Shown piece by piece: positions 2,724 through 63,786 of a stretch of 64,000 nucleotides of DNA. How positions within the stretch are numbered: position 1 is the first letter of the stretch; each line of letters starts with the position of its first letter. The position numbers were made by a program, and so were the translations under genes. The stretch lies in IMG/VR virus record IMGVR_UViG_3300036853_000446, positions 248,001 to 312,000 of that record, one strand, 5' to 3'. The notes beneath the pieces were generated by a model. That model was not told the origin of the DNA, searched no databases, and saw nothing but the letters and a program-made list of their open reading frames with translations.

Positions 2724-2980
2724 GTCGTGGTCTGGTGGGCTCCACGCAGCCTCTCAAATCTCTCTGCTCGCTGAGGAGGCAGCGCAACAGAACCAACGTC
2801 GTGGTCAGGTGGGCTCCACGCAGCCTCTCAAATGTCCGAGATCGCGACTTTAGGGTATGTAAATTCGTCGTGTCGTGGTCAGGTGGGCTCCACGCAGCCT
2901 CTCAAAGAAGGTGAACCCGTTGCTGTATGCCTTCGCGTCTACGAGTCGTGGTCAGGTGGGCTCCACGCAGCCTCTCAAAG
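2724..2980 (-). CRISPR. CRISPR array A1 (4 repeats, 3 spacers)
   Basis: 36-nt repeats GTCGTGGTCWGGTGGGCTCCACGCAGCCTCTCAAAK at 2724, 2798, 2872, 2945; spacers 37-38 nt; leader on the right. Confidence 0.95.
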
Positions 2981-3135
2981 ACGTAGCCTCAAAGTTCAGG
3001 CAATATAGGGCATTACGAGGCGGATTGCGAGAGGGTCGATCGTGCTCTGATTTGCCGTCGCGTAACCCTTCGATTTGCTTTGCATGGGCTGATCGAATCA
3101 CGTACTCGCTCGCCAAAGCCCCAAAGGGGCTCGGT
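2981..3135 (-). promoter_or_regulatory. conserved CRISPR leader copy 1
   Basis: Aligns with 12522-12665 and 18319-18472 (CAATATAGGGCATT, CGGATTGCGAG, GCGTAACCCTTCGATTTGCTTTGC, ATCGAATCAC, CGCTCGCC). Confidence 0.85.
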
Positions 3136-3184
3136 CGTCATTCGCAGGCGGACTCAGCGTGTGCTATGATTTATTAACTCAACC

Positions 3185-11773: not shown

Positions 11774-12521
11774 GTCGTGGTCTGGCCTCTTAACTCGAAA
11801 GACGAGCCGTCGTTGATGGGGACATGCGCTGAGTCGTGGTTGGGTGGGCTCCACGCAGCCTCTCAAATGGTATCGAGGAGGACGTCCTTCTCGCTGAACC
11901 GTCGTGGTCTGGTGGGCTCCACGTAGCCTCTCAAATCCACCAGGACGGACAAGCGTCCCGAGTAGTCGGCGTGTCGTGGTTGGGTGGGCTCCACGCAGCC
12001 TCTGAAATCGTCGGGCGAATCGTGTCTCATGCCGACAAGGTACTCGTCGTGGTCGGGTGGGCCCCACGCAGCCTCTCAAATCCGTTGAGAGAAGTAGTGA
12101 CCACTCGGTGTGGGATCTCGTCGTGGTCTGGTGGGCTCCACGCAGCCTCTCAAATTTTTCCTAAGGAGCGAGCCGGCGAACTATCCTCCCCGTCGTGGTC
12201 GGGTGGGCCCCACGCAGCCTCTCAAATCAAGATACCGCTGGTGCGAGACATTGGTGATACGTGGTCGTGGTTAGGTGGGCTCCACGCAGCTTCTCAAAAT
12301 CCATGACGGCGTCAGCGGTTGGTGAGGGTCATCCTCAAGTCGTGGTTGGGTGGGCTCCACGCAGCCTCTCAAATCAGCCGCTCAAATTACGCACCTCGCC
12401 ACGCTGGTTCCGTCGTGGTCAGGTGGGCTCCACGCAGCCTCTCAAATTCTTGTAATCGCCTGCGAGCCGTCCAGCCGCGGGTTGCGTCGTGGTCTGGTGG
12501 GCTCCACGCAGCCGCTCAAAT
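11774..12521 (-). CRISPR. CRISPR array A2 (10 repeats plus 1 internally deleted trailer repeat)
   Basis: Repeats at 11833, 11901, 11973, 12046, 12120, 12192, 12264, 12339, 12412, 12486; degenerate copy 11774-11794. Confidence 0.97.
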
Positions 12522-12665
12522 TTCGTAGCCTTAAAGTTCAGTCAATATAGGGCATTGCAACGCGGATTGCGAGGGGGTCGTTTATGAGCTGGTTTGCTCG
12601 CGCGTAACCCTTCGATTTGCTTTGCGTCGGTTGATCGAATCACCTTCCCGCTCGCCAAAGCCCCA
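12522..12665 (-). promoter_or_regulatory. conserved CRISPR leader copy 2
   Basis: Aligns with the other two leaders. Confidence 0.85.
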
Positions 12666-12707
12666 GAGTCGTCAGTCGCAGGTGTGCTACCCTTCGTTAA
12701 GGCCCCA

Positions 12708-17550: not shown

Positions 17551-18318
17551 ATCGTGGTCTGGTAAGGCTCCATACAGCCTCGCGAATAAGTTCACAGCTT
17601 GAAAGGTCAAGGACAGATCGGGTTGTCGTGGTTGGGTGGGCTCCACGCAGCCTCTCAAATCGGTCGCCTTTGACACGGGCATACTCATATCATGCTGCCA
17701 GTCGTGGTTGGGTGGGCTCCACGCAGCCTCTCAAATCCGAGCACCACCGCGTCGCGACGCGGAAGGTAGTGGGGTCGTGGTTGGGTGGGCTCCACGCAGC
17801 CTCTCAAATCGCAAGCCAAGGATGCACGTGCTACGGACGACCGCGTGTCGTGGTTGGGTGGGCTCCACGCAGCCTCTCAAATCAAGCTGGCGGAAGCTGC
17901 CGTTGACCACTCTTCTATCGTCGTGGTCGGGTGGGCTCCACGCAGCCTCTCAAATCTGAACCTCGAGTGGATGCTTAATGGACCGCTCATCGTCGTGGTC
18001 GGGTGGGCTCCACGCAGCCTCTCAAATCCAATGCGCGACGAGGCTCGTCACCTGCGTCGGATTGTCGTGGTTGGGTGGGCTCCACGCAGCCTCTCAAATT
18101 CGCCTCGAAGCAGTCGGCACTCGTATCGGATGCGCACGTCGTGGTCGGGTGGGCTCCACGCAGCCTCTCAAATTCTGCGCCTGCAGGTGCGGGCTACCGA
18201 TCACAGTGGCGTCGTGGTCGGGTGGGCTCCACGCAGCCTCTCAAATCCGTCAAGTCCTCGGCCCCGAGACGGAGGTTGTGCTGTCGTGGTCGGGTGGGCT
18301 CCACGCAGCCTCTCAAAT
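17551..18318 (-). CRISPR. CRISPR array A3 (10 repeats plus 1 degenerate trailer repeat)
   Basis: Repeats at 17625, 17701, 17774, 17847, 17920, 17992, 18064, 18138, 18211, 18283; degenerate copy 17551-17587. Confidence 0.97.
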
Positions 18319-18472
18319 CTGTAGCCATAAAGTCCAGGCAATATAGGGCATTGCAAGGCGGATTGCGAGAGGGTCATTTACGAGCTGGTTTGTTCGCGCG
18401 TAACCCTTCGATTTGCTTTGCGTGAACTATCGAATCACCTTCGCGCTCGCCGAAGCCCAGAGGGGCTTCGGC
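18319..18472 (-). promoter_or_regulatory. conserved CRISPR leader copy 3 with distal hairpin
   Basis: Aligns with other leaders; perfect GCCGAAGCCC-AGAG-GGGCTTCGGC at 18449-18472. Confidence 0.85.
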
Positions 18473-18826
18473 CGTCCTGAGGTCCGATCACGACAACCCT
18501 ACCGTCTGTTTCGTCACGCCAACCAAGCCGAGAAGTCCGGCGAGACGGATCGCCTTGTAACAGCGTTCCTCGACCAATCCCGTCTCGCGGCCGAGCCTCG
18601 CGGCAAAAACATCGATGTCCACGATCCCGAGCCGGTTCGAGAGCTGAGCGACCAACAGAACCAATGAGACCGCGCTCCCGGGCATCTCGGTTCCGTGCAT
18701 CGTAAGCTCCGGAAACCATGGCACCGTGTGGAGAGGGCTCTCGGACATGGCCCAATCTTATCGTCTTTTTCCACGCGAGGGCGCATCAAAAGCGCGGTAA
18801 CCTCCACGCCCATGGGAGAAATAAAG

Positions 18827-31538: not shown

Positions 31539-32189
31539 ATGAAGAAGGAGATTTCCGACGAGCAGCTCTATACGACGATAGAGGGTATCAAGAAGCAGCT
31601 GGCCAAGCCACTCTCGAAGCTAGGCAAGGTCAGCCTGCAGAAGGGTACGAGCCTGGACCGAGCCATCAGGGTGAGGACTCCCCTGGGTTCGCATCTCAAT
31701 GTCGTCGTCCGCCACGAACACAGTGGTGGCTTCTCCTGTAAGCCGACCGGGCTGTACGCCGTCCTGGTACAAGAGGTGCGAACGGCCGACTCCAGAATCA
31801 AATATCGCGCTCGTGACTTCACGGGGCTCGCCCCCAAGCTGACCGAGAAGCAGGTCACGGACATCGTTGCCTGCGTGCAGAAGCATCTGGTTGCACAGAA
31901 CGAGCGGACTCGCGACGTAGATGCTCGAATCGCCGAGTCCGAGCACTCCGAGAAGGAGAAGGCGGCACGTGAAGCTGGTCTGCGCGCCACTCTCGAACGT
32001 CATGGTATCAAAGCAGGCGAGCTGAGCATCTACTGCGAGGGAGCGACTTTTAATGTGCGGCTCCGGCTCGAGGAAGACGAACTCGAGCAATTTCTGAAGT
32101 TCTGGAAGACGCGCGACCGCGGGTCACCAGTCCCCCAGGGAAGGCGTCGAGCGGAATTACCTTCTCGGGCCAAAAAGGCAACCAAATGA
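31539..32189 (+). CDS. hypothetical protein
   Basis: ATGA-coupled to the GHKL gene. Confidence 0.65.
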   Translation: MKKEISDEQLYTTIEGIKKQLAKPLSKLGKVSLQKGTSLDRAIRVRTPLGSHLNVVVRHEHSGGFSCKPTGLYAVLVQEVRTADSRIKYRARDFTGLAPKLTEKQVTDIVACVQKHLVAQNERTRDVDARIAESEHSEKEKAAREAGLRATLERHGIKAGELSIYCEGATFNVRLRLEEDELEQFLKFWKTRDRGSPVPQGRRRAELPSRAKKATK

Positions 32190-33649
32190 CTGAACCCGCC
32201 ATCATCGTCGACCGCCGTGGTCTTGCCAGTAAACTCGCAAACCGCCCTCGTGCATTCATCCTGAACGAGCTGCTGCAGAACGCCTGGGACGAGAACGTCA
32301 CGACGGTCCGCGCGACCGTCGAGCCCCTCCCGGGCAAGGCCCAGTGCCGGATCACGGTCGAGGACGACAGCCCCGAGGGTTTCTCCGACCTGACGAGCGT
32401 CTACACGATGTTCAAGCATTCGAAGAAAGCTCCCGACCCGACGAAGCGCGGCCGCTTCGAGATGGGTGAGAAGCTCGTGATCGCCCTGGCGCTCAGCGCT
32501 GAGGTCACATCGACCAAGGGCACGGTCATTTTTGACGAGGACGGTCGGCGCACGTCACGGGCGACACGCAAGGCGGGAACGGTCTTCACGGGCGTTTTCC
32601 GCATGACTCGCGAGCAATACATCGAGCTGATCGCTTCGGCAAAGATGTTGATCCCCCCGCCCGGCATCAAAACCTATCTTGACGGCGACCTGCTCCCGCC
32701 ACGAGAGGTTCTTCATTCTTTCGAGGCGACCCTACAGACGATCCGAGCGGACGCGGACGGCAATCTGGCGCCGACGCAGCGCAAGACGGCCGTCAACGTC
32801 TACGAGGTCCTCGAGGGCGAGACGGCGCACATCTACGAGATGGGCATCCCCGTCGTCGAGACCGGCGACCGCTGGCACTACGACGTCGAGCAGCGCGTCC
32901 CCGTCAATTGGGAACGCAACAACGTGCCGCCGGCATTCCTCAGGACGTTGCGCGTGGAGGTCCTCAACGCCATGCACTCGCGCCTCTCGGAAGACGAGTC
33001 TACCGCGGCCTGGGTGACCGAAGCGGCCGCCGACGGTCGCTGCGCGCCCGAGGCCATCACCACGGTCGTTCACCGCCGCTTCGGCGACAAGGTCGTGATC
33101 CACGACCCCTCCGACCCCGAGGGGACGAAGATTGCCGTCAGCCAAGGCTACACGGTCATCCCCGGCGGGGCCTTCTCGAAGGGCGCATGGGAGAACGTCA
33201 AGACATCCGGCGCCGCCCTCCCCGCGGGGCAGGTGACGCCGAGCCCCAAGCCTTACGATGAGAACGGACGGCCCGAGAACGTCATCCCGCCCTCAAAGTG
33301 GACCCCGGATATGTCGAGAATTGCGGCCTTTGCAGAGCACATCTTTTTAAGGCTCACCGGCAAGACCTGTCGCACGACGATCGTCAGGGAGCTGCAGGCG
33401 TCGTGGGCCGCCAATTTCGGGCCCACCGATGACGGGGGCTTTCGCCTTTGCCTAAATTACGGCCGGCTCGGCAAGAAGTGGTTTGCCCTGGCGAAACGTG
33501 ACGAGCGCGTGCTCGACTTGCTGCTCCACGAGTTCGTTCACTACGAGGTGAATGATCATCTGTCCAACGAGATGCACGAAGCGGCGACGAAGCTCGGCGC
33601 GCGTCTCGTGGGAATTGCCCTCGACGAACCCAATCTTTTCAACGACTGA
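32186..33649 (+). CDS. GHKL ATPase with C-terminal HExxH domain
   Basis: ELLQNAWD (N box), EDDSPEG (G1), RGRFEMGEK (G2), GT; LLHEFVH. Confidence 0.85.
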   Translation: MTEPAIIVDRRGLASKLANRPRAFILNELLQNAWDENVTTVRATVEPLPGKAQCRITVEDDSPEGFSDLTSVYTMFKHSKKAPDPTKRGRFEMGEKLVIALALSAEVTSTKGTVIFDEDGRRTSRATRKAGTVFTGVFRMTREQYIELIASAKMLIPPPGIKTYLDGDLLPPREVLHSFEATLQTIRADADGNLAPTQRKTAVNVYEVLEGETAHIYEMGIPVVETGDRWHYDVEQRVPVNWERNNVPPAFLRTLRVEVLNAMHSRLSEDESTAAWVTEAAADGRCAPEAITTVVHRRFGDKVVIHDPSDPEGTKIAVSQGYTVIPGGAFSKGAWENVKTSGAALPAGQVTPSPKPYDENGRPENVIPPSKWTPDMSRIAAFAEHIFLRLTGKTCRTTIVRELQASWAANFGPTDDGGFRLCLNYGRLGKKWFALAKRDERVLDLLLHEFVHYEVNDHLSNEMHEAATKLGARLVGIALDEPNLFND

Positions 33650-34096: not shown

Positions 34097-35092
34097 GTGA
34101 AACGGCGCCTCAAGGAAATCACCCCGAATATCCACAACGAAAAGCTGTTTGACTCGACGGACGAGAGCCTGGCTGAGCTGGGGCGCGACATCGAGCGGAA
34201 CGGGCTGCGGTGCCCGATCCGCATCACGAAAGTTGGTGCGGTCATCATCGATGGTGAGCGTCGGTGGCGTGTCTGCAAAAAACTCGGCTGGACCCTCATC
34301 GATGTCGTGGAGGAAGACGTCCACCGGAACGAAATTCTCGGTCTCCTCATCGACACCGTTTCACAGCAGCGGCACATGACGTTGATCGAGCAGGCCCGCG
34401 TTTACGCGACGTATTACAACCACCTAAAGAGAGCGCACCGGAAGGGCGATCTCAACCACATCGCGGCCAAGCAGATCGCACTCGAGAAAGCGCGACTGCC
34501 TTTCCGATCGGTGGCTCTCGCCGATCAACTCGTGCAAGTCGTCGACCGAGGCCACCCCGACCTGCATGAGAAATTGCTCCGCGGGGAGATGAGCATCACT
34601 GGGGCCTACGAGGCCATCCTGCGACGCTTGTATAAGCCCATGAAATACGAGCTACTCCCCCGCCCCGAGCGTACCCTCGAACAGCTCGCTCGAGCCAAGC
34701 GGCATGAAGACGAACGGCTCGAAAGGCAGGAAGAGCTGGAATTTACCCAGACTTACATTGATGCCCATCTGGATGACCTCGAATCGGTGGAGGCGCAACG
34801 AAGGCTGCTCGGACTGTTCGAGCCCGATCCGCCTCCCGCGGCGCTGAAATACCGAGACAACCCCGAGAGCCAAGTCATCGCAGAGGCCTTTGAGTCCCTG
34901 GCTGTGAAGGAGCCCCCCGAGCTGCTCGTTGGGCGCCTCACGATGTTCATCGAAGAGATCGCGGCGAGCGTCCAAGGCGTCGATGAGTCGCGCGCGCGGG
35001 ACATCGTTCGAGACGTGGTCAAGCCGATGGTCCTTCGTCTCGCGCAAGCCTTCCCGCGCCAGGAGTTCGAAGTCCCCGTCAATCGGGAATGA
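34097..35092 (+). CDS. ParB N-terminal domain protein
   Basis: LAELGRDIERNGLRCPI...IIDGERRWR. Confidence 0.85.
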   Translation: MKRRLKEITPNIHNEKLFDSTDESLAELGRDIERNGLRCPIRITKVGAVIIDGERRWRVCKKLGWTLIDVVEEDVHRNEILGLLIDTVSQQRHMTLIEQARVYATYYNHLKRAHRKGDLNHIAAKQIALEKARLPFRSVALADQLVQVVDRGHPDLHEKLLRGEMSITGAYEAILRRLYKPMKYELLPRPERTLEQLARAKRHEDERLERQEELEFTQTYIDAHLDDLESVEAQRRLLGLFEPDPPPAALKYRDNPESQVIAEAFESLAVKEPPELLVGRLTMFIEEIAASVQGVDESRARDIVRDVVKPMVLRLAQAFPRQEFEVPVNRE

Positions 35093-42159: not shown

Positions 42160-43602
42160 ATGGCAAAGAGGAAGTCAAAGACGACGAGTGTCCAGCCCGG
42201 TGAAGTGCTGAAGGGGTTTCGCGTCAAACTCAGACCGACCCAGGAGGATCTGCGTTACCTATCGACGGCTCAAGTCGAGCTGATGACGATGTGGAACATC
42301 CTCGTGATAACGTGGAAGACGCACGTCGATTACTGCGTTCGGCATTGCGAGGACCTCGGGCTCATCGGACCCGTACCGCCACGACCGACCTCGGACCAAG
42401 ACACGAACGTGCCCGAAGAGATCGCCGAATGGGAGGAGTACGCGGCACTCTGCCGTGAACGCCGCCGAAGCGCTCGCGAGCAGTGTAAGACCGTCGAGGG
42501 TCTGACACGGCGCGACTGGGCGAATCGAGCCCTCGATTACCACCAACTTGATCTCACGGAGAAGGCTCGAGAGCAGACGCAGATCGATTACCGCGTCCTG
42601 CGGTCCGCCGTGAAGGGCGTCACGACGGCCCATATGGCCCAGGCCGTCATCGAGACTTACAAGGCGTCATTGCAGAAAGGGCGGCCGCCACCGAAGCTCA
42701 AGAGACGCCCGCTCGAGATGCCTCTCTTGCTTCGCAGCGGTAAGGATTTGCTTACGCTTTCAGCGAACCACTCCACCCGAACGACGGCGTCCGGGAAGAA
42801 GCGGCTCACCGGCTCCCACCACTGCATCGTCAAGTTTGGCCCGCTCAAGATCGGGGGACGATTCAACCGCCCGCCGTCGGGTCCCTTCCTCCAGGGCATT
42901 TCGATCGGGCTCGAGAAGGACGGCTGGTACGCCTCCGCGAAGGTCCGGACCCTACCTGAGGATCTGCCGAAGCCAACGAAGGAAATCATCGCGATCAACC
43001 CGGGACTCGAATGCCTCTACGCCGACAATGAGGGTTATGTGATCGAGAACCCACGGGGCAACGCTTACTCCCTCCGGATGCGCGAGATGAGCGATTGGAT
43101 CGACGACGCCGAAACCCAGTGGGACGAAGCCCACCGTCGCAACCATCAAGCTCGATATGCCGAGCGTTTCGCGCGGCACACGGAGGACCTCATCTACAGC
43201 CGCATCCTCCCGAAGCTCGCCGATTACGAGACGATTCTCATCGGCAAGGCCGGCAAAACCGCCGCTCAAGGTCGACAAAACCGCATCAGTAAGAACGACG
43301 AGGGCGGCTACGTTTCGGCCATGAGCTTGATGCAGCAGCTCATCATCCAGAGGTATGGCCTCTATGACCCCGACGAGAATCCGACGGGGCGAGTGCGAGT
43401 GCTGGAGTCCATGGGAATTTCCCGGAGGTGCTCGCGTTGCGGAACCGAGCACGCAACCCGTTATCAACGCAACAATTTACGCCGGTATGACCAACAGACC
43501 GATTGCCAGGAACCCTCGTGTCGGCTCAAGATACACGTCGATGTTGGCGCCGCTCGCAACCTGCTTTCCAACTATCGGGATTTGCAGGCGGCAGCAGAAT
43601 GA
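42160..43602 (+). CDS. compact type V (TnpB/Cas12-like) effector with inactivated RuvC, 480 aa
   Basis: TnpB-like GFRVKLRPT, PKLKRR, GWYAS; RuvC-I IIAINPG (D->N), RuvC-II TILIGK (E->G), Zn finger CSRC...CQEPSC, RuvC-III HVDVGAARNL; RBS GAGGGG; array 2 nt downstream. Confidence 0.88.
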   Translation: MAKRKSKTTSVQPGEVLKGFRVKLRPTQEDLRYLSTAQVELMTMWNILVITWKTHVDYCVRHCEDLGLIGPVPPRPTSDQDTNVPEEIAEWEEYAALCRERRRSAREQCKTVEGLTRRDWANRALDYHQLDLTEKAREQTQIDYRVLRSAVKGVTTAHMAQAVIETYKASLQKGRPPPKLKRRPLEMPLLLRSGKDLLTLSANHSTRTTASGKKRLTGSHHCIVKFGPLKIGGRFNRPPSGPFLQGISIGLEKDGWYASAKVRTLPEDLPKPTKEIIAINPGLECLYADNEGYVIENPRGNAYSLRMREMSDWIDDAETQWDEAHRRNHQARYAERFARHTEDLIYSRILPKLADYETILIGKAGKTAAQGRQNRISKNDEGGYVSAMSLMQQLIIQRYGLYDPDENPTGRVRVLESMGISRRCSRCGTEHATRYQRNNLRRYDQQTDCQEPSCRLKIHVDVGAARNLLSNYRDLQAAAE

Positions 43603-43604
43603 CC

Positions 43605-44869
43605 CTCAGAACGGCAGCGTGGTGCCTACCCTCCCACGACGAGGAGTTCGGTGGCCGCGCGCGATGATGTGCAAGACCTCAGAACGGCAGCGTGGTGCCT
43701 ACCCTCCCACGACACGAGGTCGGAAAGAGTCTCAATCTCGGCAATCTCACGCTCAGAACGGCAGCGTGGTGCCTACCCTCCCACGACGACCTGCGGAAGA
43801 AGGGCCTTCGCCGATCTACTTGGGCTCAGAACGGCAGCGTGGTGCCTACCCTCCCACGACGAAGTGACGTCTACCAATTGGGCTTGGTCCTCTATCACTC
43901 AGAACGGCAGCGTGGTGCCTACCCTCCCACGACTTATGGGGATGAACCGAGAACCAGCCTCGATCGATGTCTCAGAACGGCAGCGTGGTGCCTACCCTTC
44001 CACGATAGCCGCGTCCTCCAAACTGCCGAATCGATTCCGAAACTCAGAACGGCAGCGTGGTGCCTACCCTCCCACGACGGCATCTCCACTCGTTCCCTCG
44101 TCCTCCGGGTATGGACCTCAGAACGGCAGCGTGGTGCCTACCCTCCCACGACTACGGCTGGCGGTCCCCCGCCAAACGAGGTTGGCGTGCTCAGAACGGC
44201 AGCGTGGTGCCTACCCTCCCACGACGAAACATCACGCGCCTGGGCAACAGCATCAGCGTCGCCATCTCAGAACGGCAGCGTGGTGCCTACCCTCCCACGA
44301 CCAACGACATGACCCCGTGGAACCTGTGAGCTTGCTCGGCGCTCCTCGGAACGGCAGCGTGGTGCCTACCCTCCCACGACGGAAAGACTCGTTCGTGATC
44401 CCGAGTCGACCCCCATGCTCAGAACGGCAGCGTGGTGCCTACCCTTCCACGACGAGGAGTTCGGTGGCCGCGATGGTGATGCGCAAGCCCTCAGCATGGC
44501 AGCGTGGTGCCTACCCCTCCACGACTTCGAGCAACACGTCAACGCGCGTATTGGCTCGTTCAGCCTCAGAGTGGCAGCGCGGTGCCTACCCTTCCGCGAC
44601 ACGTCCCCCAGTTAGCGGAAAGCCTCGGTACTGGTCTCAGAATGGCAGCGTGGTGCCTACCCTTCCACGACCACATCCGTGGATAGAGAGTCCCCCTCCG
44701 GAGTCAACCTCAGAACGGCAGCGTGGTGCCTACCCTTCCACGACTTTCCGATCTCGTTAAAGTAGATGCGGACTTATGGCAGCGTGGTGCCTACCCTTCC
44801 ACGACGTGCACGGGTCTTCTCAAAGAAAGACGCCTCAGAACGGCAGCGTGGTGCCTACCATTCCACGAC
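43605..44869 (+). CRISPR. CRISPR array B (18 repeats, 17 spacers)
   Basis: 36-nt CTCAGAACGGCAGCGTGGTGCCTACCCTYCCACGAC at 43605, 43678, 43752, 43825, 43898, 43971, 44043, 44117, 44190, 44266, 44345, 44418, 44490, 44565, 44636, 44709, ~44770 (5'-degenerate), 44834; decay increases away from the gene. Confidence 0.98.
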
Positions 44870-45975: not shown

Positions 45976-46160
45976 GGTTGAGAGGCTGCGTGGAGCCCAC
46001 CCAACTACGACGGTATCATTCGGCTTTTTATCAGGTCCCCCGATCCGGAGTAACTTGCGAGGCTGCGTGGAGCCCACCCAACTACGATATGCCCGTGCCG
46101 ACGTGGCGCTTCCAAGAAAGGTACATTTGAGAGGCTGCGTGGAGCCCATCACACCACGAC
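45976..46160 (+). CRISPR. CRISPR mini-array A4 (3 family-A repeats)
   Basis: Repeats at 45976, 46053, 46125 in the ATTTGAGAGG...CCACGAC orientation. Confidence 0.9.
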
Positions 46161-46250
46161 TTGCTTGGATCGTTGACTTGATAGGTTTTCAACCCTGATG
46201 ACAGGCTTGCACCGATGAACCCGGTTGGCTCGACCCCAAACCCGGGTAAC

Positions 46251-46286
46251 GATGAAATGGCAGCGTGGTGCCTACCCTTCCACGAC
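46251..46286 (+). repeat. orphan family-B CRISPR repeat
   Basis: GATGAAATGGCAGCGTGGTGCCTACCCTTCCACGAC, 3' 28 nt match repeat B. Confidence 0.85.
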
Positions 46287-49340: not shown

Positions 49341-51872
49341 ATGCTCAGAGAGTCAGGGGCAGCTCGCGCGAGGGACTGTGCACCCTCAAGTGCCGTCCAC
49401 CGCACCGCTAAAACAGAGCCCGTTGTCATTCAGTGCTTTGAGGCACCGTGCGGGACACGACCACATAACCTGCCGAAACGAAAAGGAAAGGATAAAGCGT
49501 ACGTCCCGAACAGGTCGCAGCGTGCCAGCTACACAGCCCTGGATGGTCAACTCCTTTGTATACTTACCAAGCCAACGGGTAGCGGAAAAACCATTGACAT
49601 CCTAACACTTGCACTGAGCGACCTCGCAAAGCCCGACGGACGAAAACAGGTCGTCATCTACTCGATGACGGACATCGGTCCTGGCTTCGGTGGCCCAGGA
49701 AGGCAGGAGGGCCCCATCACGATCGACGTTCCGGGGCATGGGCTCATGACCTGGACCCCGATTTGTGCCTCTGAACAGACCGTCGAAACGATCATCAACT
49801 TCTTGCGACGGCGCCCCGCCAAGGATCGCAGTCAGCGCATGCTCATCTGCACCCACCTTGCTCTGGTGCTGGCTCACGAGGAAATGCTGCGACGTGGTTA
49901 TAAGCGCCCCTTCAAAAAAACCTCACTCTACATAGACGAGTGCCACCACATCTGCTGGGACATGTCGAGTGGCACAGCCGTCACGAACGGCCTCGGTAAG
50001 ATCGTTTCCCATTACTACGAGTGCCGGCCCGGCAAGCTCGTGCTTGCCACTGCCACGTTCATGCGCCCTGACGGGCAGGTCATCCCGCCCGAGTATCGCG
50101 ACAAATTCGCCGCCTACGAGCTTCCGATGCATGAGCACCTTGCATCGATGCCGCACCTGAAGGGGATACGCTTCCACTTCGTGATGGCGTCCGCTGTCGA
50201 GGCTGTTGAGACGATCATCGGGGGAGACCCTCATCGCCCGACGCTAATGTGGTTGCCAAACAACGTGATCGGCAGCGCCAAGGCGCCTTATGTCAAGCGC
50301 TTGGTCGACGCTACACCTGACTGTATTCGCGACCGAATTTACGACTTCACGGATGACGAGCAGGTGTCCGAGATTCGAGAGCGCTTTCACCGGCTCAAAC
50401 TGGACCCTGTCGAGTACCCGTGCCTTGGGATTGCCCTGCGTCGGTTGCTCGAGGGAGTTGACTCACCTATGGCGAGCCGCGGGATCATCCTCGGGCTTCG
50501 CGGTATCCGGGACATCATCCAGATGGTCGGGCGCTTTATCCGCGACTTAGAAGGCAAGCCGTATGCTGATATCTACATCGTCGTCGACCCTCCCTCCGAA
50601 GACGAAGCAGACGTTGTCGAGCACCTCGAGGACAATCTCTCCGCCATCTTCATTGCGATGATCGCGGGGTGGCAGTACGGCCCGGCCCGCAAGCCCCGGA
50701 ACAAGGCGGAGCGGGATCTCGCCGAGAAGGTGGGTAAGATTCTCAGCAACCCGGAAGCAACCACCGTAGTGCTAAACGCAATCGCGAGCGCGGTCGCCCG
50801 TCACGCTGACGGTGAGCCGGAGCAACTCAGCGCCGGCATGCACGAATCCATGCGTCGACTGGCAGAAGAGCGACCGGACCTCGCGGACATGAAGGACCCT
50901 GCGGTTCGGTCACGACTCGTCGAGGACGTCGACGAAAGAATGGCAGGACCTGCTGCCGAAGCCGAGAAGAAGCTGAAATACAAGATCCCGGGGCTCAAGG
51001 GAGCGCGAGATCTGACTGGGCTCAAGTTGACGGCTGAGCAAGGTCTTGCTCGCAACATCACGGTCCTCGGCTTCACGTGCGGCGCGCGCAGCATGAAGAT
51101 GATGAGGGAGAGTTTAGCGTCGGATACAATTGAACTCGTATACGAAGATGTGCGAGAAGCCGCCCTCCGATGGTGGGAAGCAACCGGTAAGTTCCCCCAC
51201 GCGGGAATGGTGGGCGTAGTGGTTGATATCGGAGGCCGTCAGCATTGCTGGCGTCAGGTCAACGGCTGGCTGAGCCGGCACTGCAGCTCGTCCTTGGGCA
51301 AACTCAGAATCGAGTGCACGGGCAACCTCGGCAGGGGTCTGATTCCGTATGATCTAGTCGCAGAGGAGGCATCTGAATACCGGGCCCGGACCGGTGAGTG
51401 GCCTCGAATTAAATCGGGACCCCTCGCTCGATTGCGTACTACGTGGGAGACACTATACCAAAAGTTCATTCGGGAAGGCACTAGCCTGGAAGACTTTTTG
51501 GAATCCAGGTTCGGGCCCTTGCGACTGAGACACTTCGACACCTATGACGAATGGCGAAAACACGCACTGGATGCAAACGTCGGTTGTCATACGGACTATC
51601 AGAGAGCGCGCGGTGAGTCTCGCATTGACAGCCGATTCCCCTCAAATCCGCGAGATTATTACGGTGCCGGGTGGAAGGGGTGGCCAAAAGACCGCAAGGT
51701 CTCACGTGGTGAAAGCCATGGATGCGCAAAGTTGTCCGATGCATCGATCAAGCGAATGCGAAGGCGATTTAAGCAGCGTTTCACAAAGCGCGCCGTCGCC
51801 GAAGAGTTTGGTGTCTCCATCTCAACCGTCAAGCTCATCAAGTCTGGGCGCATTTGGGCACACGTGAAGTGA
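49341..51872 (+). CDS. SF2 helicase with C-terminal DNA-binding modules
   Basis: KPTGSGKT, IDECHH, ATAT, LLEGVD, IQMVGRFIR; CGGTGTA at 49307-49313. Confidence 0.85.
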   Translation: MLRESGAARARDCAPSSAVHRTAKTEPVVIQCFEAPCGTRPHNLPKRKGKDKAYVPNRSQRASYTALDGQLLCILTKPTGSGKTIDILTLALSDLAKPDGRKQVVIYSMTDIGPGFGGPGRQEGPITIDVPGHGLMTWTPICASEQTVETIINFLRRRPAKDRSQRMLICTHLALVLAHEEMLRRGYKRPFKKTSLYIDECHHICWDMSSGTAVTNGLGKIVSHYYECRPGKLVLATATFMRPDGQVIPPEYRDKFAAYELPMHEHLASMPHLKGIRFHFVMASAVEAVETIIGGDPHRPTLMWLPNNVIGSAKAPYVKRLVDATPDCIRDRIYDFTDDEQVSEIRERFHRLKLDPVEYPCLGIALRRLLEGVDSPMASRGIILGLRGIRDIIQMVGRFIRDLEGKPYADIYIVVDPPSEDEADVVEHLEDNLSAIFIAMIAGWQYGPARKPRNKAERDLAEKVGKILSNPEATTVVLNAIASAVARHADGEPEQLSAGMHESMRRLAEERPDLADMKDPAVRSRLVEDVDERMAGPAAEAEKKLKYKIPGLKGARDLTGLKLTAEQGLARNITVLGFTCGARSMKMMRESLASDTIELVYEDVREAALRWWEATGKFPHAGMVGVVVDIGGRQHCWRQVNGWLSRHCSSSLGKLRIECTGNLGRGLIPYDLVAEEASEYRARTGEWPRIKSGPLARLRTTWETLYQKFIREGTSLEDFLESRFGPLRLRHFDTYDEWRKHALDANVGCHTDYQRARGESRIDSRFPSNPRDYYGAGWKGWPKDRKVSRGESHGCAKLSDASIKRMRRRFKQRFTKRAVAEEFGVSISTVKLIKSGRIWAHVK

Positions 51873-52297
51873 GACAACGCCAGGCGAAGTCCAATGGAAC
51901 GAGCGTTCCCACTCGCGTCCTGACCTGGTACCTCGCCACGAGCGCGAAAGGTGGCACCGTCGACGACTGCTCTCGCTCTCTGGGGCTCGCGAATCAGTCG
52001 GTGTCGGGGGCGGTGACACGGCTCACGAACGCCGGCAAGCTGTCAAAGACCGACCTCACGCGCAGCACTCGACTGAAGCGCCCGGCAGCCGTCTACGTCC
52101 ACAGCAAATTCGCAAAGGGCCCGTCCAATGCGAACAAGGCCGAAGCTTCCCGAGCTGAAGCCGCTCGGGAAGCAAGAGTCCTCCAACTCTTCCGGCAGTA
52201 TGTGGAGGCTCGGAAGAAGGCAGGGAAGGACGAGCGGGCGATCCAGCGGGCGCTCATGCGGTTAATGAAAGGGCTGGCGGTCGAGGCGGAGCGTTAA
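51869..52297 (+). CDS. winged-HTH protein (same pattern as 46750-47292)
   Basis: GTVDDCSRSLGLANQSVSGAVTRLTNAGKL...TRSTR...AAVY. Confidence 0.7.
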   Translation: MRQRQAKSNGTSVPTRVLTWYLATSAKGGTVDDCSRSLGLANQSVSGAVTRLTNAGKLSKTDLTRSTRLKRPAAVYVHSKFAKGPSNANKAEASRAEAAREARVLQLFRQYVEARKKAGKDERAIQRALMRLMKGLAVEAER

Positions 52298-58681: not shown

Positions 58682-58846
58682 ATGGCAGCACGTCGGACCC
58701 GTTCACCATCACAAGCGCCATCAGAGCCGAATGCCGAGACGGTGCGCGTAACCTGTTACCAGGTCGACGTTTCGCGGGAACAGCAACAAGCCATTCATCA
58801 GCAGCTTCTCGAATTACTCGCTGAAATTTATCGGAACCTTAAATGA
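58682..58846 (+). CDS. 54-aa protein coupled to the recombinase
   Basis: MAARRTRS...QLLELLAEIYRNLK; ATGA overlap with 58843; not in ORF track. Confidence 0.55.
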   Translation: MAARRTRSPSQAPSEPNAETVRVTCYQVDVSREQQQAIHQQLLELLAEIYRNLK

Positions 58847-60420
58847 AGGCTGCAATCTACGCCCGTGTGTCGTCCGACCAGCAAAGGGAGCGCCACACCA
58901 TCGGCTCGCAGCTCACCGAGCTACCCAAGTACGCAAAAAGCCAAGGCTGGACGGTTGTCCGACTCTACCAAGACGACGGCAAGTCGGGAGAGAGTATCGA
59001 CGGGCGTCCAGAGTTTCAGGCACTTCTCGAGGACGCCGAGAAGAAACTCTTTGAAATTGTCCTCGTCATCGACCTCGACCGCATCACTCGCTCGAAACGT
59101 GATCAGGAGGGGGCTTTCATCTACGACACGTTTCGGTTGCATGGCATCAAGCTGGCGACTCCGAGCAACGGTCTCATCGATCTCGAGAATGAGGACCAGG
59201 ACCTTCAGATCGGTATCCTTCAGGCTTTCGCAAAGTTTGAGAAGCGGAAATTTCTCCGCCGAACGATGCGAGGTAAGTATCAGGCCGCTAAAGACGGGAA
59301 GCGGTATGGTTCGATCGATCCCTACGGGTATCGGTGGGTTATCGACCCGGTCTTGAAGGCGGGGGGCTCGTACCAGATCGTCGAGGACGAAGCTAAAGTC
59401 GTTCGTCGCATCTACAGCCTCGCTCTCGAAGGTCATGGCGTGGCAATGATCGCTTGGATGTTAGAGAATGAGGGTATTCGGACGCGACCACGCGCACCCC
59501 GTGGCACCGAAGGCAAGATCGCCGGTCCTTGGTGGCGCTCGTCTGTGCTGAAGGTTCTGCATTCCGTGACGTACACGGGATCGTTCAAAGTCCTCAAGGG
59601 GAAGGAGAGCGAACCCCTCTCGATCAAGGTCCCGCCTATTGTCACCCGGGCAACCTGGGACGCAGCCCAGAGGGCGCTCACACAGCGCAAGATGTCCTCG
59701 GGCGCTCCGGCACGACACGACCACCTCTTACGCGGATGCGCCTCGTGCGGCGTCTGCGGGTACAAGATGTGGATCGTTACCCCTAGGGCCGGCAAAAGCG
59801 CTGCCTACTACAGATGCTGCACGACCAACGGATGGCGCGGCATGGGCCTCAAGGGCCCATGTGGCAACAAGCACCACCGAGTGGACCGCACGGACCATGA
59901 GGTCCAGACGAAGGTGCTCGAGATTCTGCAAAATCCAAAGCTGCTAGCTCAAGCGTGTTCGTTGCAGGGTGAACCTACGGACGGGGTCGACTGGAAAGGT
60001 CAGCTCCGAGGTCTCGAGCAAAAGCTTGCGATACTGGATGAGGCCGCGTCCGACGCGATGGTCCGTCAGCGTCGGGGAATCATTCCTTCCGCGGTCGCCG
60101 AGAAGGAACTCCTGAACATTGCCCGCGAGCGAAAGCTCGTTGACCGAAACGTCAAACTAGCGCGTGTCAGATCCGGTAAAGCCTCAGCTGAACGCAGCCT
60201 GCGCCAAAATATCGAGGATCAAGCAAAGGCCCTAAGCAGCGGACTCGATCAAGCGGACTTTGAAACGCGACGGAAGATTATCACCCTGCTCCTTCCGAGA
60301 GAGCTGGGCTGCGGTGTCGTCCTGCACCGGGACGGTGGTATCGACATCAAATGGGTCCTGCCACTGCCCGGCGACATCGAGCACGTGGAACTACGCACCG
60401 CCCTCAAAAAAGTTGGGTGA
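58843..60420 (+). CDS. large serine recombinase (integrase)
   Basis: AAIYARVSS, DDGKSG, RPEFQALL, DLDRITR, PYGY recombinase domain, CGVC...YYRC...C Zn ribbon, coiled coil. Confidence 0.95.
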   Translation: MKAAIYARVSSDQQRERHTIGSQLTELPKYAKSQGWTVVRLYQDDGKSGESIDGRPEFQALLEDAEKKLFEIVLVIDLDRITRSKRDQEGAFIYDTFRLHGIKLATPSNGLIDLENEDQDLQIGILQAFAKFEKRKFLRRTMRGKYQAAKDGKRYGSIDPYGYRWVIDPVLKAGGSYQIVEDEAKVVRRIYSLALEGHGVAMIAWMLENEGIRTRPRAPRGTEGKIAGPWWRSSVLKVLHSVTYTGSFKVLKGKESEPLSIKVPPIVTRATWDAAQRALTQRKMSSGAPARHDHLLRGCASCGVCGYKMWIVTPRAGKSAAYYRCCTTNGWRGMGLKGPCGNKHHRVDRTDHEVQTKVLEILQNPKLLAQACSLQGEPTDGVDWKGQLRGLEQKLAILDEAASDAMVRQRRGIIPSAVAEKELLNIARERKLVDRNVKLARVRSGKASAERSLRQNIEDQAKALSSGLDQADFETRRKIITLLLPRELGCGVVLHRDGGIDIKWVLPLPGDIEHVELRTALKKVG

Positions 60421-63636: not shown

Positions 63637-63786
63637 ATTTCAGAGGCTGCGTGGAGCCCGCCCAACCACGACTCATTCAATCGGCAGAACTTGGTTCAAA
63701 TATGAAGGGCTGCGTGGAGCCCACCCAACCACGACAAGATTCACGACACGCTGTGAGAGGCCGCGTGGAGCCCACCCAACCACGAC
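63637..63786 (+). CRISPR. CRISPR mini-array A5 (3 family-A repeats, short spacers)
   Basis: Repeats at 63637, 63700, ~63751; spacers 27 and 15-18 nt; AT-rich upstream with TACAAT at 63604-63609. Confidence 0.9.

What the first reader, a model, noticed from the sequence alone, without database searches (positions are those of the whole stretch)
43605..44600. Two repeat families share one H-type pseudoknot, with compensatory mutations visible in the window
Seen: B = CUCAGAAC-GGCA-G-CGUGG-UGCC-UACCCUC-CCACG-AC. A (reverse complement) = AUUUGAGA-GGCU-G-CGUGG-AGCC-CACCCAA-CCACG-AC. Both have the same 36-nt geometry. Stem 1 covaries between families (GGCA/UGCC vs GGCU/AGCC). The repeat at 44565-44600 has a double compensatory change in stem 2 (CGCGG/CCGCG). 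Variants at 45976 and 46053 (CUACG) and at 12046 and 12192 (GGCU/GGCC) keep G-U wobbles. Most other variation falls in the first 8 nt and the 7-nt linker. From memory, Cas12m repeats have a similar topology (needs verifying). Inference: a tracrRNA-independent crRNA handle under structural selection.
Basis: partly seen in the sequence, partly recalled or inferred. Interest (0 to 1): 0.88.

Follow-up and report, generated by a model that had tools for sequence, protein, structure and literature searches.

The report
Pseudoknotted guide-RNA handle, compact dead Cas12
The 36-base CRISPR repeats in this giant-phage fragment fold into a small RNA pseudoknot of the kind already solved for Cas12m guide RNAs, but here they serve a smaller, separate and uncharacterised Cas12 lineage that has lost its DNA-cutting residues.

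Summary
The window holds 49 repeats of 36 nt in six arrays, 19 of family B and 30 of family A. All share one layout: an 8-nt variable 5' flank, stem 1 (4 bp), one G, stem 2 (5 bp), no junction, a 7-nt linker and a terminal AC.

In the window, 435 of 441 stem pairs are Watson-Crick, 4 are G-U and 2 are broken.

The decisive evidence comes from other contigs. Arrays next to homologous effector genes keep the same layout with different stem sequences. Across 45 distinct repeats, 99.5% of pairs are kept and 7 of 9 pairs show double changes. Register-shifted controls pair only 30-48%.

The layout matches the cryo-EM crRNA scaffold of type V-M Cas12m: a 36-nt scaffold with a stem stacked on a pseudoknot, a G:A pair and a terminal AC. 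The RNA fold is therefore a known kind.

The new part is the protein, a 435-480 aa TnpB-derived Cas12 ending 2 nt before array B. It forms its own clade apart from Cas12m, and its RuvC triad reads N-x-D while its nearest relatives keep D-E-D. I found no anti-repeat, and no cas1 among the ORFs I scanned.

Most likely function: tracrRNA-free, binding-only DNA silencing.

The parts
42160..43602 (+). Compact Cas12/TnpB-like effector gene. It encodes 480 aa (P0001); the ORF is open from 42001, and the start at 42160 is inferred from homologues. The RuvC-I position is Asn (N280, 42997-42999), the RuvC-II position is Gly (G362, 43243-43245), and RuvC-III Asp is kept (D461, 43540-43542).
   Evidence: AlphaFold model with pLDDT 79.7; Foldseek best matches are Cas12f, TnpB, Cas12p and Cas12m
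43605..44869 (+). CRISPR array B: 18 repeats of 36 nt with 35-43 nt spacers. It starts 2 nt after the effector stop codon. Repeats are perfect at the gene-proximal end and decay distally.
43613..43626 (+). In the first B repeat: stem 1 5' arm GGCA (43613-43616), single G (43617), stem 2 5' arm CGUGG (43618-43622), stem 1 3' arm UGCC (43623-43626).
43627..43640 (+). In the first B repeat: 7-nt linker UACCCUC (43627-43633), stem 2 3' arm CCACG (43634-43638), terminal AC (43639-43640) directly before the spacer.
44565..44600 (+). B repeat with the compensatory double change in stem 2 (U16-A32 to C16-G32).
45976..46160 (+). Decayed array of 3 A-type repeats. Two carry the G17-U31 wobble.
46251..46286 (+). 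Solo B-type repeat 90 nt downstream of the decayed A-type array.
63637..63786 (+). Decayed A-type mini-array of 3 repeats with 27- and 15-nt spacers. The last copy has the broken pair C12-A19.
17625..18318 (-). A-type array of 10 repeats with no adjacent effector gene.
11833..12521 (-). A-type array of 10 repeats. It holds the U12-G19 wobble copies (12046, 12192) and one broken copy (12264).
2724..2980 (-). A-type array of 4 repeats.
18319..18478 (-). Conserved leader of about 150 nt upstream of the A array at 17625-18318. Homologous leaders lie at 12522-12681 (-) and 2981-3140 (-).

Best explanation
The repeats are the crRNA handles of a minimal, tracrRNA-free type V CRISPR system carried by a 407-kb viral contig.

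Shown here:
- Each 36-nt repeat has two interleaved helices: stem 1 (columns 9-12 with 19-22) and stem 2 (columns 14-18 with 30-34).
- One nucleotide (G13) separates the two 5' arms, there is no junction nucleotide, the linker is 7 nt, and a conserved A35-C36 abuts the spacer.
- Both helices are kept by compensatory change in every array found next to a homologue of the effector.
- The layout is the same as the solved Cas12m scaffold.

Inferred:
- The arrays are transcribed on the effector's strand. Array B would be read through from the gene, and the A arrays from their own conserved leaders.
- The variable 5' octamer holds the processing site.
- The spacer-derived 3' part guides the complex to PAM-flanked DNA.
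- Because RuvC-I is Asn and RuvC-II is lost, the complex binds and blocks transcription or replication rather than cutting, as Cas12m does.
- One effector probably serves both repeat families. A and B have the same stem 2 and differ in stem 1 by one swapped base pair, and close homologues use arrays that mix such stem 1 variants.
For: Anatomy.

Covariation:
- In 45 distinct repeats from the window and five other contigs, 99.5% of cells are paired. Seven of 9 pairs have changes on both sides, and all 5 stem 2 pairs covary. No shuffle of 500 reached the observed score. Slid registers pair 30-48%.
- In 11 array-type representatives, 100% of cells are paired, 7 of 9 pairs have double changes, and no shuffle of 500 matched.
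- Stem 1 occurs as GGCA/UGCC, GGCU/AGCC, GGCG/CGCC, GGCC/GGCC, GCCC/GGGC and GGCU/GGCC. The D-E-D relatives use AGGG/CCCU and CGUU/AACG.
- Stem 2 occurs as CGUGG/CCACG, CGCGG/CCGCG, UGCAG/CUGCA, CGCAG/CUGCG, UGCGG/CCGCG and CUGGA/UUCAG.

Strand:
- In seven of the nine effector contexts the first repeat starts 2-10 nt after the stop codon on the same strand; in L001/L002 and L026 it follows after roughly 85-280 nt.
- G-U outnumbers A-C by 16 to 2 in stem cells.

Known counterpart: the MmCas12m2 and GoCas12m cryo-EM descriptions and the Cas12m crRNA sequences, which parse the same way. The MsCas12m array on its plasmid shows the same within-array covariation.

No tracrRNA: the longest complementarity to a repeat outside the arrays is 13 nt and lies 36 kb from the effector gene. 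The duplex energy between the repeat and the ORF 3' kilobase is no better than 74% of background segments.

Nuclease loss: Asn is invariant at RuvC-I and RuvC-II is lost in P0001-P0017, while 22 of the 24 relatives P0019-P0060 keep D-E-D. The N-x-D clade is monophyletic and nested inside the D-E-D family.

No cas1, cas2 or cas4 appeared among the 21 window ORFs scanned. These included every ORF of 300 aa or more and several ORFs on both sides of the effector gene and array B.
Against: No RNA data exist, so transcription, processing site and fold are all inferred.

Thermodynamically the pseudoknot is not clearly favoured without protein. Each hairpin alone is only about -5.8 kcal/mol, and ViennaRNA cannot score pseudoknots.

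Some repeats from L004 and L005 were picked with a scan that required pairing. This inflates the paired percentage for those rows. The window, L007, L008 and L018 rows were chosen by sequence or position only.

Two window copies break a stem 1 pair.

The protein cannot be placed in the Cas12m family, so the structural analogy rests on the RNA. No protospacer was found, so the target and the biological role are unknown. Loss of the canonical RuvC triad does not by itself prove loss of all nuclease activity.
Confidence: 0.78

Rival explanations
1. Only one hairpin forms at a time. On this view the repeat is an ordinary stem-loop handle (stem 2 with an 11-nt loop, or stem 1 with a 6-nt loop), and the second helix is an alternative conformer or has another role.
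For: RNAalifold, which cannot predict pseudoknots, returns stem 2 alone. The two hairpins have nearly equal energies, -5.9 and -5.7 kcal/mol.
Against: Both helices covary independently. The zero-nt junction and the 1-nt loop are invariant across the five contigs aligned. Stem lengths of 4 and 5 bp with loops of 1 and 7 nt (4 nt in the D-E-D relatives) are sterically compatible with a classical H-type knot; this rests on established pseudoknot geometry and is an inference. The homologous Cas12m scaffolds are seen as stem plus pseudoknot stacked in one helix.
Confidence: 0.08
2. The arrays are transcribed from the opposite strand, and the functional RNA is the reverse complement.
For: The reverse complement has a lower nested minimum free energy, -12 to -14 kcal/mol.
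Against: Those reverse-strand structures are not conserved: only 60-74% of cells pair across the alignment, against 99.5% for the forward pseudoknot. The 16 G-U pairs become A-C mismatches on the other strand. The array follows the effector gene on the same strand at all nine effector contexts examined, within 2-10 nt of the stop codon at seven of them. Cas12m crRNAs with the same layout are known to run repeat 5', guide 3'.
Confidence: 0.03
3. The system needs a tracrRNA, as in Cas12n or Cas12p. That RNA would be encoded inside or next to the effector ORF and would pair with part of the repeat.
For: The wider family's profile matches RdCas12n over its full length (E 7e-23). Cas12n tracrRNAs overlap the ORF (PMC12216341).
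Against: There is no anti-repeat in the ORF 3' kilobase, downstream of the array, or elsewhere in the window. The pseudoknot partner that a tracrRNA supplies in Cas12n and Cas12p is here supplied within the repeat itself. In seven of the nine effector contexts the array abuts the stop codon, leaving no intergenic room.
Confidence: 0.05
4. The pseudoknot handle is real, but the effector does something other than binding-only silencing. It could have residual or alternative nuclease activity, or it could recruit a partner such as the neighbouring 843-aa helicase-like protein.
For: RuvC-III Asp and the zinc finger are conserved. A helicase-like gene and a 147-aa gene lie near the effector both here and in L002.
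Against: The helicase pair is shared only with the closely related element L002 and is absent from L004, L005, L007, L008 and L018. That fits synteny rather than a functional link. RuvC-I and RuvC-II are both lost. Cas12m variants with N-D-D or H-D-D triads bind but do not cut (PMC11013384).
Confidence: 0.12

Closest known systems
Type V-M CRISPR-Cas12m crRNA scaffold (MmCas12m2, PDB 8HHL/8HHM/8HIO; GoCas12m, PDB 8PM4)
   Same: Both have a repeat of 36-38 nt with a variable or disordered 5' end of 7-8 nt. Both have a 3-4 bp stem, then a pseudoknot helix whose 3' arm lies just before a terminal AC and the guide. The junction between the helices has no nucleotides, giving coaxial stacking, and a conserved G lies opposite the penultimate A. 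Neither uses a tracrRNA, and in both the array lies downstream of the effector on the same strand. Some repeats are nearly superposable: L007 against ApCas12m, and L008 against MsCas12m. RuvC-inactive variants occur in both.
   Different: Here the single-nt loop lacks the extra flipped-out base (A-24 in MmCas12m2). Stem 2 is 5 bp rather than the 6 bp of Mm, Go, Ap and Mk. The linker is 7 nt in this clade, against 4-7 nt in Cas12m. The protein is 435-480 aa rather than 536-628 aa. It aligns to a Cas12m profile only over the WED-C/RuvC/zinc-finger core and forms a separate clade. Its RuvC loss (N-x-D) arose inside a D-E-D family, so it is independent of the Cas12m H-D-D and N-D-D variants.
Type V-N Cas12n (V-U4; RdCas12n, PDB 9J09)
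   Same: Both are small TnpB-like Cas12 proteins. RdCas12n is the best full-length solved match to the wider family profile (E 7e-23). The best PADLOC models for several members are Cas12u4 and Cas12f, but weakly.
   Different: Cas12n is an active D-E-D nuclease guided by a crRNA plus a tracrRNA of about 170 nt that overlaps the ORF. Its pseudoknot forms between the repeat 3' end and the tracrRNA. Here the pseudoknot lies within the repeat, no anti-repeat exists, and the window's clade lacks two catalytic residues.
TnpB omega-RNA (reRNA) triplex-pseudoknot core
   Same: [quoted passage not shown] The protein fold matches TnpB (TM 0.62-0.74 in the ESM Atlas; Foldseek).
   Different: The omega-RNA is a single RNA of about 150 nt fixed to a transposon end. 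Here the core is reduced to 28 nt and repeated in arrays with variable spacers.
Cas12a 5'-handle pseudoknot
   Same: Both are tracrRNA-free repeat-derived handles 5' of the guide with pseudoknot-like tertiary pairing.
   Different: The Cas12a handle is about 19-20 nt: one 5-bp stem plus a few tertiary contacts. It is bound by a 1200-1300 aa nuclease that is active on DNA.

Membership tests
Type V-M (Cas12m) system | Repeat of about 36 nt whose 3' part folds into a stem plus a coaxially stacked pseudoknot ending in AC next to the guide | tested here: met
   Covariation of both helices. The parse matches the published Cas12m crRNAs and the cryo-EM descriptions. The three-dimensional fold itself was not testable here.
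Type V-M (Cas12m) system | No tracrRNA; guided by a single crRNA | tested here: met
   No anti-repeat in the window. Repeat-to-ORF duplex energy lies within background. RNA expression was not testable.
Type V-M (Cas12m) system | Effector belongs to the Cas12m (V-U1) protein family | tested here: not met
   The clade profile A1 finds no Cas12m in the PDB at E up to 10. hhalign of A1 against MsCas12m gives 21% probability. The wider profile A2 against a 5-member Cas12m profile gives 98% probability, but only over the RuvC-side core shared with all TnpBs. Cas12m and this family are separate clades, each with support 100, in the tree. The Cas12u1 model is never the best PADLOC hit.
Type V-M (Cas12m) system | Size of 536-628 aa with an Arg-rich REC 'roof' and a RuvC helical insertion | tested here: not met
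   Members here are 435-480 aa. The Cas12m side of the hhalign alignment spans about 95 more positions than the query inside the RuvC region. The model does have a long REC helical hairpin, residues 28-111, but I did not test whether it is equivalent to the roof.
Type V-M (Cas12m) system | Binds but does not cleave dsDNA | not testable with these tools
   Only the sequence proxy could be checked: RuvC-I is Asn, RuvC-II is lost and RuvC-III Asp is kept.
Type V-M (Cas12m) system | No adaptation module next to the effector | tested here: inconclusive
   No Cas1, Cas2 or Cas4 match in the 21 window ORFs scanned, which included every ORF of 300 aa or more and several ORFs on both sides of the effector gene and array B. 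About 70 small ORFs of the window and the other 343 kb of the contig were not scanned.
Type V-N (Cas12n) | Active D-E-D RuvC nuclease | tested here: not met
   The window's clade has N-x-D.
Type V-N (Cas12n) | tracrRNA overlapping the ORF that forms the pseudoknot with the repeat 3' end | tested here: not met
   No anti-repeat was found, and the pseudoknot partner lies inside the repeat.
TnpB / omega-RNA (IS200/IS605) | A single fixed guide at a transposon end, with no spacer array | tested here: not met
   The arrays hold 3 to 18 repeats with unique spacers.

The most novel reading that the evidence does not exclude
This is a separate, hypercompact Cas12 lineage of 435-480 aa, roughly 100 aa smaller than Cas12m. 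It reduced the TnpB guide RNA to a 28-nt self-contained pseudoknot, either independently or through an ancestor shared with type V-M. One of its branches then lost the RuvC triad on its own. A 407-kb phage carries that branch with six arrays and about 42 spacers, apparently as a cleavage-free silencing system against competitors or host genes. If it is active, it would be among the smallest natural tracrRNA-free DNA-binding CRISPR effectors.
Probability: 0.45. Interest if true: 0.65.

Novelty: new variant of a known kind. Interest (0 to 1): 0.5.

Why it matters
The RNA fold is not new. It is the guide-RNA core already solved for Cas12m and related to the TnpB omega-RNA core. The natural covariation gathered here (six stem 1 versions in this clade, two more in its D-E-D relatives, and six stem 2 versions) is an independent evolutionary confirmation of that fold. 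It also shows which positions are free and which are fixed: the G before stem 2, the ACC in the linker and the terminal AC.

The more useful result is the effector. It is an uncharacterised clade found on phage-like and conjugative-element-like contigs. It is 435-480 aa long, needs only a 36-nt repeat, and has an inactivated RuvC site that arose separately from the Cas12m cases. Such a protein would be a smaller chassis for CRISPR interference, base editing or epigenome editing than Cas12m.

It also gives a second data point on how nuclease-dead, binding-only CRISPR effectors arise in mobile elements. Six arrays with two repeat families and a single effector raise a testable question: how much stem 1 and 5'-flank variation can one effector tolerate?

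Tried and rejected
- Plasmid and phage reference collections gave no DNA or protein match to the locus. The species-representative genome scan found no relative.
- The metagenome contig scan with the wide profile returned only distant TnpB-like loci.
- Rfam at gathering threshold had no family for the repeats or anything else in the window.
- There is no second effector copy or pseudogene next to the A arrays (tblastn). All arrays of this repeat type in the 407-kb contig lie inside the window.
- Three 559-585 aa proteins matched the N-terminal half of the profile. I checked whether they bridge to Cas12m, and they do not.
- Spacer targets were not found. No spacer matches elsewhere in the window. 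The 19-mer shared by B spacers 1 and 12 hits more than 120 genomes, but the flanks differ, so these are chance GC-rich matches; some fall in what reads as the dnaA 'EEFGGRDHTT' motif by my own reading of the flanks. Two other spacer seeds hit only the contig itself.
- I rejected the 843-aa helicase-like gene plus the 147-aa gene as a conserved partner. They are shared only with the closely related element L002.
- I rejected Cas12p, CasDelta and CasLambda as identities. Cas12p and CasDelta differ in size and RNA requirements. CasLambda was only a weak structural match.
- The effector ORF has no internal stop.
Full report
WHAT IS IN THE SEQUENCE

A mismatch-tolerant search finds 49 copies of a 36-nt repeat in six arrays (Tandem Repeats Finder sees the larger ones).
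- Family B has 18 copies at 43605-44869 on the plus strand and a solo copy at 46251.
- Family A has 4, 10 and 10 copies on the minus strand, at 2724-2980, 11833-12521 and 17625-18318.
- Family A also has two decayed plus-strand sets of three copies, at 45976-46160 and 63637-63786.
- Spacers are 35-43 nt in the intact arrays.

- columns 1-8: an 8-nt 5' flank;
- columns 9-12: stem 1, 5' arm;
- column 13: a single G;
- columns 14-18: stem 2, 5' arm;
- columns 19-22: stem 1, 3' arm, with no junction nucleotide before it;
- columns 23-29: a 7-nt linker;
- columns 30-34: stem 2, 3' arm;
- columns 35-36: AC, directly before the spacer.

HOW VARIATION IS DISTRIBUTED IN THE WINDOW

I counted substitutions against each family's consensus.
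- 34 lie in the 5' octamer.
- 38 lie in the linker, mostly in its last three positions.
- 8 lie in the 18 stem columns.
- 1 lies in the single-nucleotide loop and 2 in the tail.

Of the eight stem substitutions, two form the compensatory pair in the repeat at 44565. Four create G-U wobbles, at 45976, 46053, 12046 and 12192. Two break a pair, at 63751 and 12264, both in decayed copies.

The A and B consensus sequences differ at a dozen positions. Within the 20 core positions they differ only at columns 12 and 19, and those two changes are complementary.

This is suggestive but amounts to about two compensatory events. The bare structural pattern is also loose: 75 matches in the window against 22 +/- 4 in shuffles. 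The window alone does not prove the fold.

THE EFFECTOR

An ORF ends 2 nt before the first B repeat. It is open from 42001, and homologues put the real start at 42160, giving 480 aa.
- It matches only the TnpB/Cas12f zinc-finger and TnpB models, and weakly.
- It has no direct sequence match in the PDB.
- It has 13 close homologues, all from metagenomes.
- A full HMM scan of 1.8 billion representatives finds about 60 full-length relatives of 420-480 aa, and then ordinary TnpBs.
- The AlphaFold model has mean pLDDT 79.7. It matches Cas12f, TnpB, Cas12p and Cas12m structures with TM about 0.42-0.50 on the query side.
- Only one copy exists in the window.

The window is part of IMG/VR contig UViG_3300036853_000446, which is 407,634 bp long. 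The window covers roughly positions 248,001-312,000.

COVARIATION ACROSS HOMOLOGOUS LOCI

I fetched the contigs that encode the homologues. Wherever sequence continues past the gene, a repeat array follows on the same strand. In seven of the nine effector contexts the first repeat starts 2-10 nt after the stop codon. In L001/L002 and L026 it starts after roughly 85-280 nt. Many contigs end inside the first repeat, as expected when assemblers break at arrays.

Within the N-x-D clade the repeats are 36 nt with the same layout and different stem sequences.
- Stem 1 appears as GGCA/UGCC, GGCU/AGCC, GGCG/CGCC, GGCC/GGCC, GCCC/GGGC and GGCU/GGCC.
- Stem 2 appears as CGUGG/CCACG, CGCGG/CCGCG, UGCAG/CUGCA, CGCAG/CUGCG, UGCGG/CCGCG and CUGGA/UUCAG.

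Results on 45 distinct repeats (alignment A3), tested against the pseudoknot:
- 99.5% of cells are paired.
- 7 of 9 pairs have changes on both sides, including all five stem 2 pairs.
- No shuffle of 500 reaches the observed covariation score.
- Sliding the 3' partners by 1-3 columns drops pairing to 30-48%.

To avoid counting related copies many times, I repeated the test on 11 array-type representatives. All cells are paired, 7 of 9 pairs show double changes, and no shuffle of 500 matches.

One caveat applies. Several L004 and L005 rows were found with a scan that required pairing, so they are biased. The window, L007, L008 and L018 rows were chosen by sequence or position only, and they carry most of the signal.

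Two D-E-D relatives, at about 25-30% identity to the window protein, also have 36-nt repeats with the same order of elements. They use further stem 1 versions (AGGG/CCCU and CGUU/AACG), a 4-nt linker and an 11-nt 5' flank.

STRAND, AND THE QUESTION OF A SECOND RNA

The forward strand is favoured for four reasons.
- The gene and array share a strand at all nine effector contexts examined.
- G-U pairs outnumber A-C pairs 16 to 2 in stem cells.
- The low-energy structures predicted for the reverse complement are not conserved: only 60-74% of cells pair.
- Cas12m crRNAs of the same layout are known to run this way.

No anti-repeat exists. The longest complementarity to a repeat outside the arrays is 13 nt and lies 36 kb from the effector gene. 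The best duplex between the repeat and the last kilobase of the ORF is weaker than in 74% of random window segments. Rfam has no match.

COMPARISON WITH WHAT IS KNOWN

Omura et al. (PMC10442227) describe the MmCas12m2 crRNA scaffold as follows:
- it is a 36-nt scaffold;
- its first seven nucleotides are disordered;
- it has a stem;
- A(-24) is flipped out;
- G(-23):A(-2) form a non-canonical pair;
- a six-pair pseudoknot joins C(-22)-C(-17) with G(-8)-G(-3) and stacks coaxially on the stem;
- C(-1) is the last scaffold nucleotide.

Bigelyte et al. (PMC11013384) describe the roughly 30-nt GoCas12m handle as a triplex plus a pseudoknot, reminiscent of the TnpB core. They report no tracrRNA and RuvC-independent processing within the repeat.

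Their Table S5 crRNAs parse just like the repeats here. MsCas12m reads GCCU-AG-CUCAG-GGGC, then a 7-nt linker, then CUGAG-AC. ApCas12m shares stem 1, the stem 2 core and the terminal AC with the L007 repeat.

The MsCas12m array on plasmid NC_014214 shows the same within-array covariation.

The differences here are small. There is one nucleotide fewer before stem 2: the conserved G13 probably corresponds to G(-23), and A35 to A(-2). Stem 2 has five pairs rather than the six of Mm, Go, Ap and Mk.

IS THE PROTEIN A Cas12m?

It is not demonstrably one.
- The clade profile finds no Cas12m in the PDB.
- The wider profile matches RdCas12n over its full length (E 7e-23) and TnpB (3e-22) better than Cas12m (5e-7, C-terminal only).
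- I fetched five Cas12m genes from plasmids and built a profile from them. Profile-profile comparison gives 98% probability, but only over the WED-C/RuvC/zinc-finger core shared by all TnpB descendants. The Cas12m side spans about 95 more positions there.
- In a quick maximum-likelihood tree, Cas12m and this family are separate clades, each with support 100, with TnpB-like proteins forming the third group. That tree is unrooted, and its TnpB sample is biased toward relatives of the query. It does not decide between shared ancestry and convergence.

THE CATALYTIC SITE

In P0001-P0017, RuvC-I is an invariant Asn and the RuvC-II position holds G, S, A, D, H or L. Of the 24 relatives P0019-P0060, 22 keep D-E-D.

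The N-x-D clade is monophyletic with support 100 and nested inside the D-E-D family. The loss therefore happened within this lineage, separately from the H-D-D and N-D-D Cas12m variants. Those Cas12m variants bind DNA but do not cut it.

CONTEXT

Most of the window consists of ORFs with no known family. Recognisable genes are:
- a ParB-like protein (34097-35092);
- a large serine recombinase (58843-60420);
- a GHKL-ATPase-like protein (32186-33649);
- an 843-aa helicase-like protein with a C-terminal HTH (49341-51872).

No Cas1, Cas2 or Cas4 was detected among the 21 window ORFs scanned. These included every ORF of 300 aa or more and several ORFs on both sides of the effector gene and array B.

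The homologues sit on contigs with integrases, resolvases, type IV secretion genes or phage lysozyme. The family therefore appears to be carried by mobile elements.

The three minus-strand A arrays share a leader of about 150 nt. That leader has a conserved box also present between gene and array in the two closest homologues, whose repeats are A-type. The 5' flank of B matches that of L005, where stem 1 variants U-A, G-C and A-U are mixed in one array. This supports the idea that one effector reads both families.

No protospacer was found.

VERDICT

The observation and the interpretation both stand. The pseudoknot is real by covariation, but it is the known Cas12m-type handle.

What is new is the setting. 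It is a smaller, separate Cas12 lineage with its own RuvC loss, on a very large viral contig, with six arrays and two repeat families. The function (binding-only silencing) and the fold in three dimensions are inferred and need the experiments listed under next steps.

Noticed in passing
window 18319-18478 (-), 12522-12681 (-), 2981-3140 (-); L001:8238-8506; L002:10964-11223: The three minus-strand A arrays have a conserved leader of about 150 nt. Its CTCGCAA..GCCTT box also occurs between the effector gene and the array in the two closest homologous loci. It resembles the 3' end of the effector coding sequence (the AARNL codons). The orphan arrays may therefore have arisen by duplication of a gene-end-plus-array module.
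   Followed up: partly
window 43641-43677 and 44454-44489: Spacers 1 and 12 of array B share their first 19 nt and are similar afterwards. This looks like two acquisitions from variants of one target. No target was found; the shared 19-mer gives only chance GC-rich hits in genomes.
   Followed up: partly
window 63736-63753 and 2706-2723: The sequence after the last repeat of the A array at 2724 recurs as 18 nt inside the decayed mini-array at 63637-63786. This points to duplication of an array end together with its trailer.
   Followed up: no
window 45976-46286: Three decayed A-type repeats are followed 90 nt later, on the same strand, by a B-type repeat. A- and B-type units therefore lie adjacent on one strand.
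   Followed up: no
window 12375-12411: One spacer of the A array ends with a 13-nt partial copy of the repeat's 5' end.
   Followed up: no
L031:3840-3875 (IMGVR_UViG_3300037067_010007): A solitary repeat with the same pseudoknot layout (GGCC/GGCC, CGUGG/CCACG) lies in another viral contig, just upstream of an ATG. No effector gene is detected in the 5 kb fetched around it. It may be a stand-alone cr-like RNA.
   Followed up: partly
L018:2489-2524: A homologue (P0015) is followed by a single repeat with no second copy before the next gene. This would be a one-guide locus.
   Followed up: no
L004:7511-7590: Two further repeats with the same layout lie about 2.4 kb upstream of the effector gene in an intergenic gap. 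Scattered mini-arrays therefore occur in other elements too.
   Followed up: no
window 49341-52297; L002:6237-9205: An 843-aa helicase-like protein with a C-terminal HTH, plus a 147-aa protein, are about 60% identical between the window and L002. They are absent from the other effector loci. I take this as synteny of related elements rather than a partnership with the effector.
   Followed up: yes
window 43651-44760 (+); L008:11989-13182: Long ORFs running through the arrays (369 aa here; a called 397-aa 'gene' in L008) are artefacts of the repeat periodicity.
   Followed up: yes
L029:3856-4396 (NC_014214.1, MsCas12m array): The reference Cas12m array itself has degenerate repeats. At least one keeps stem 2 through a G-U wobble, which parallels the pattern in the window.
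   Followed up: partly
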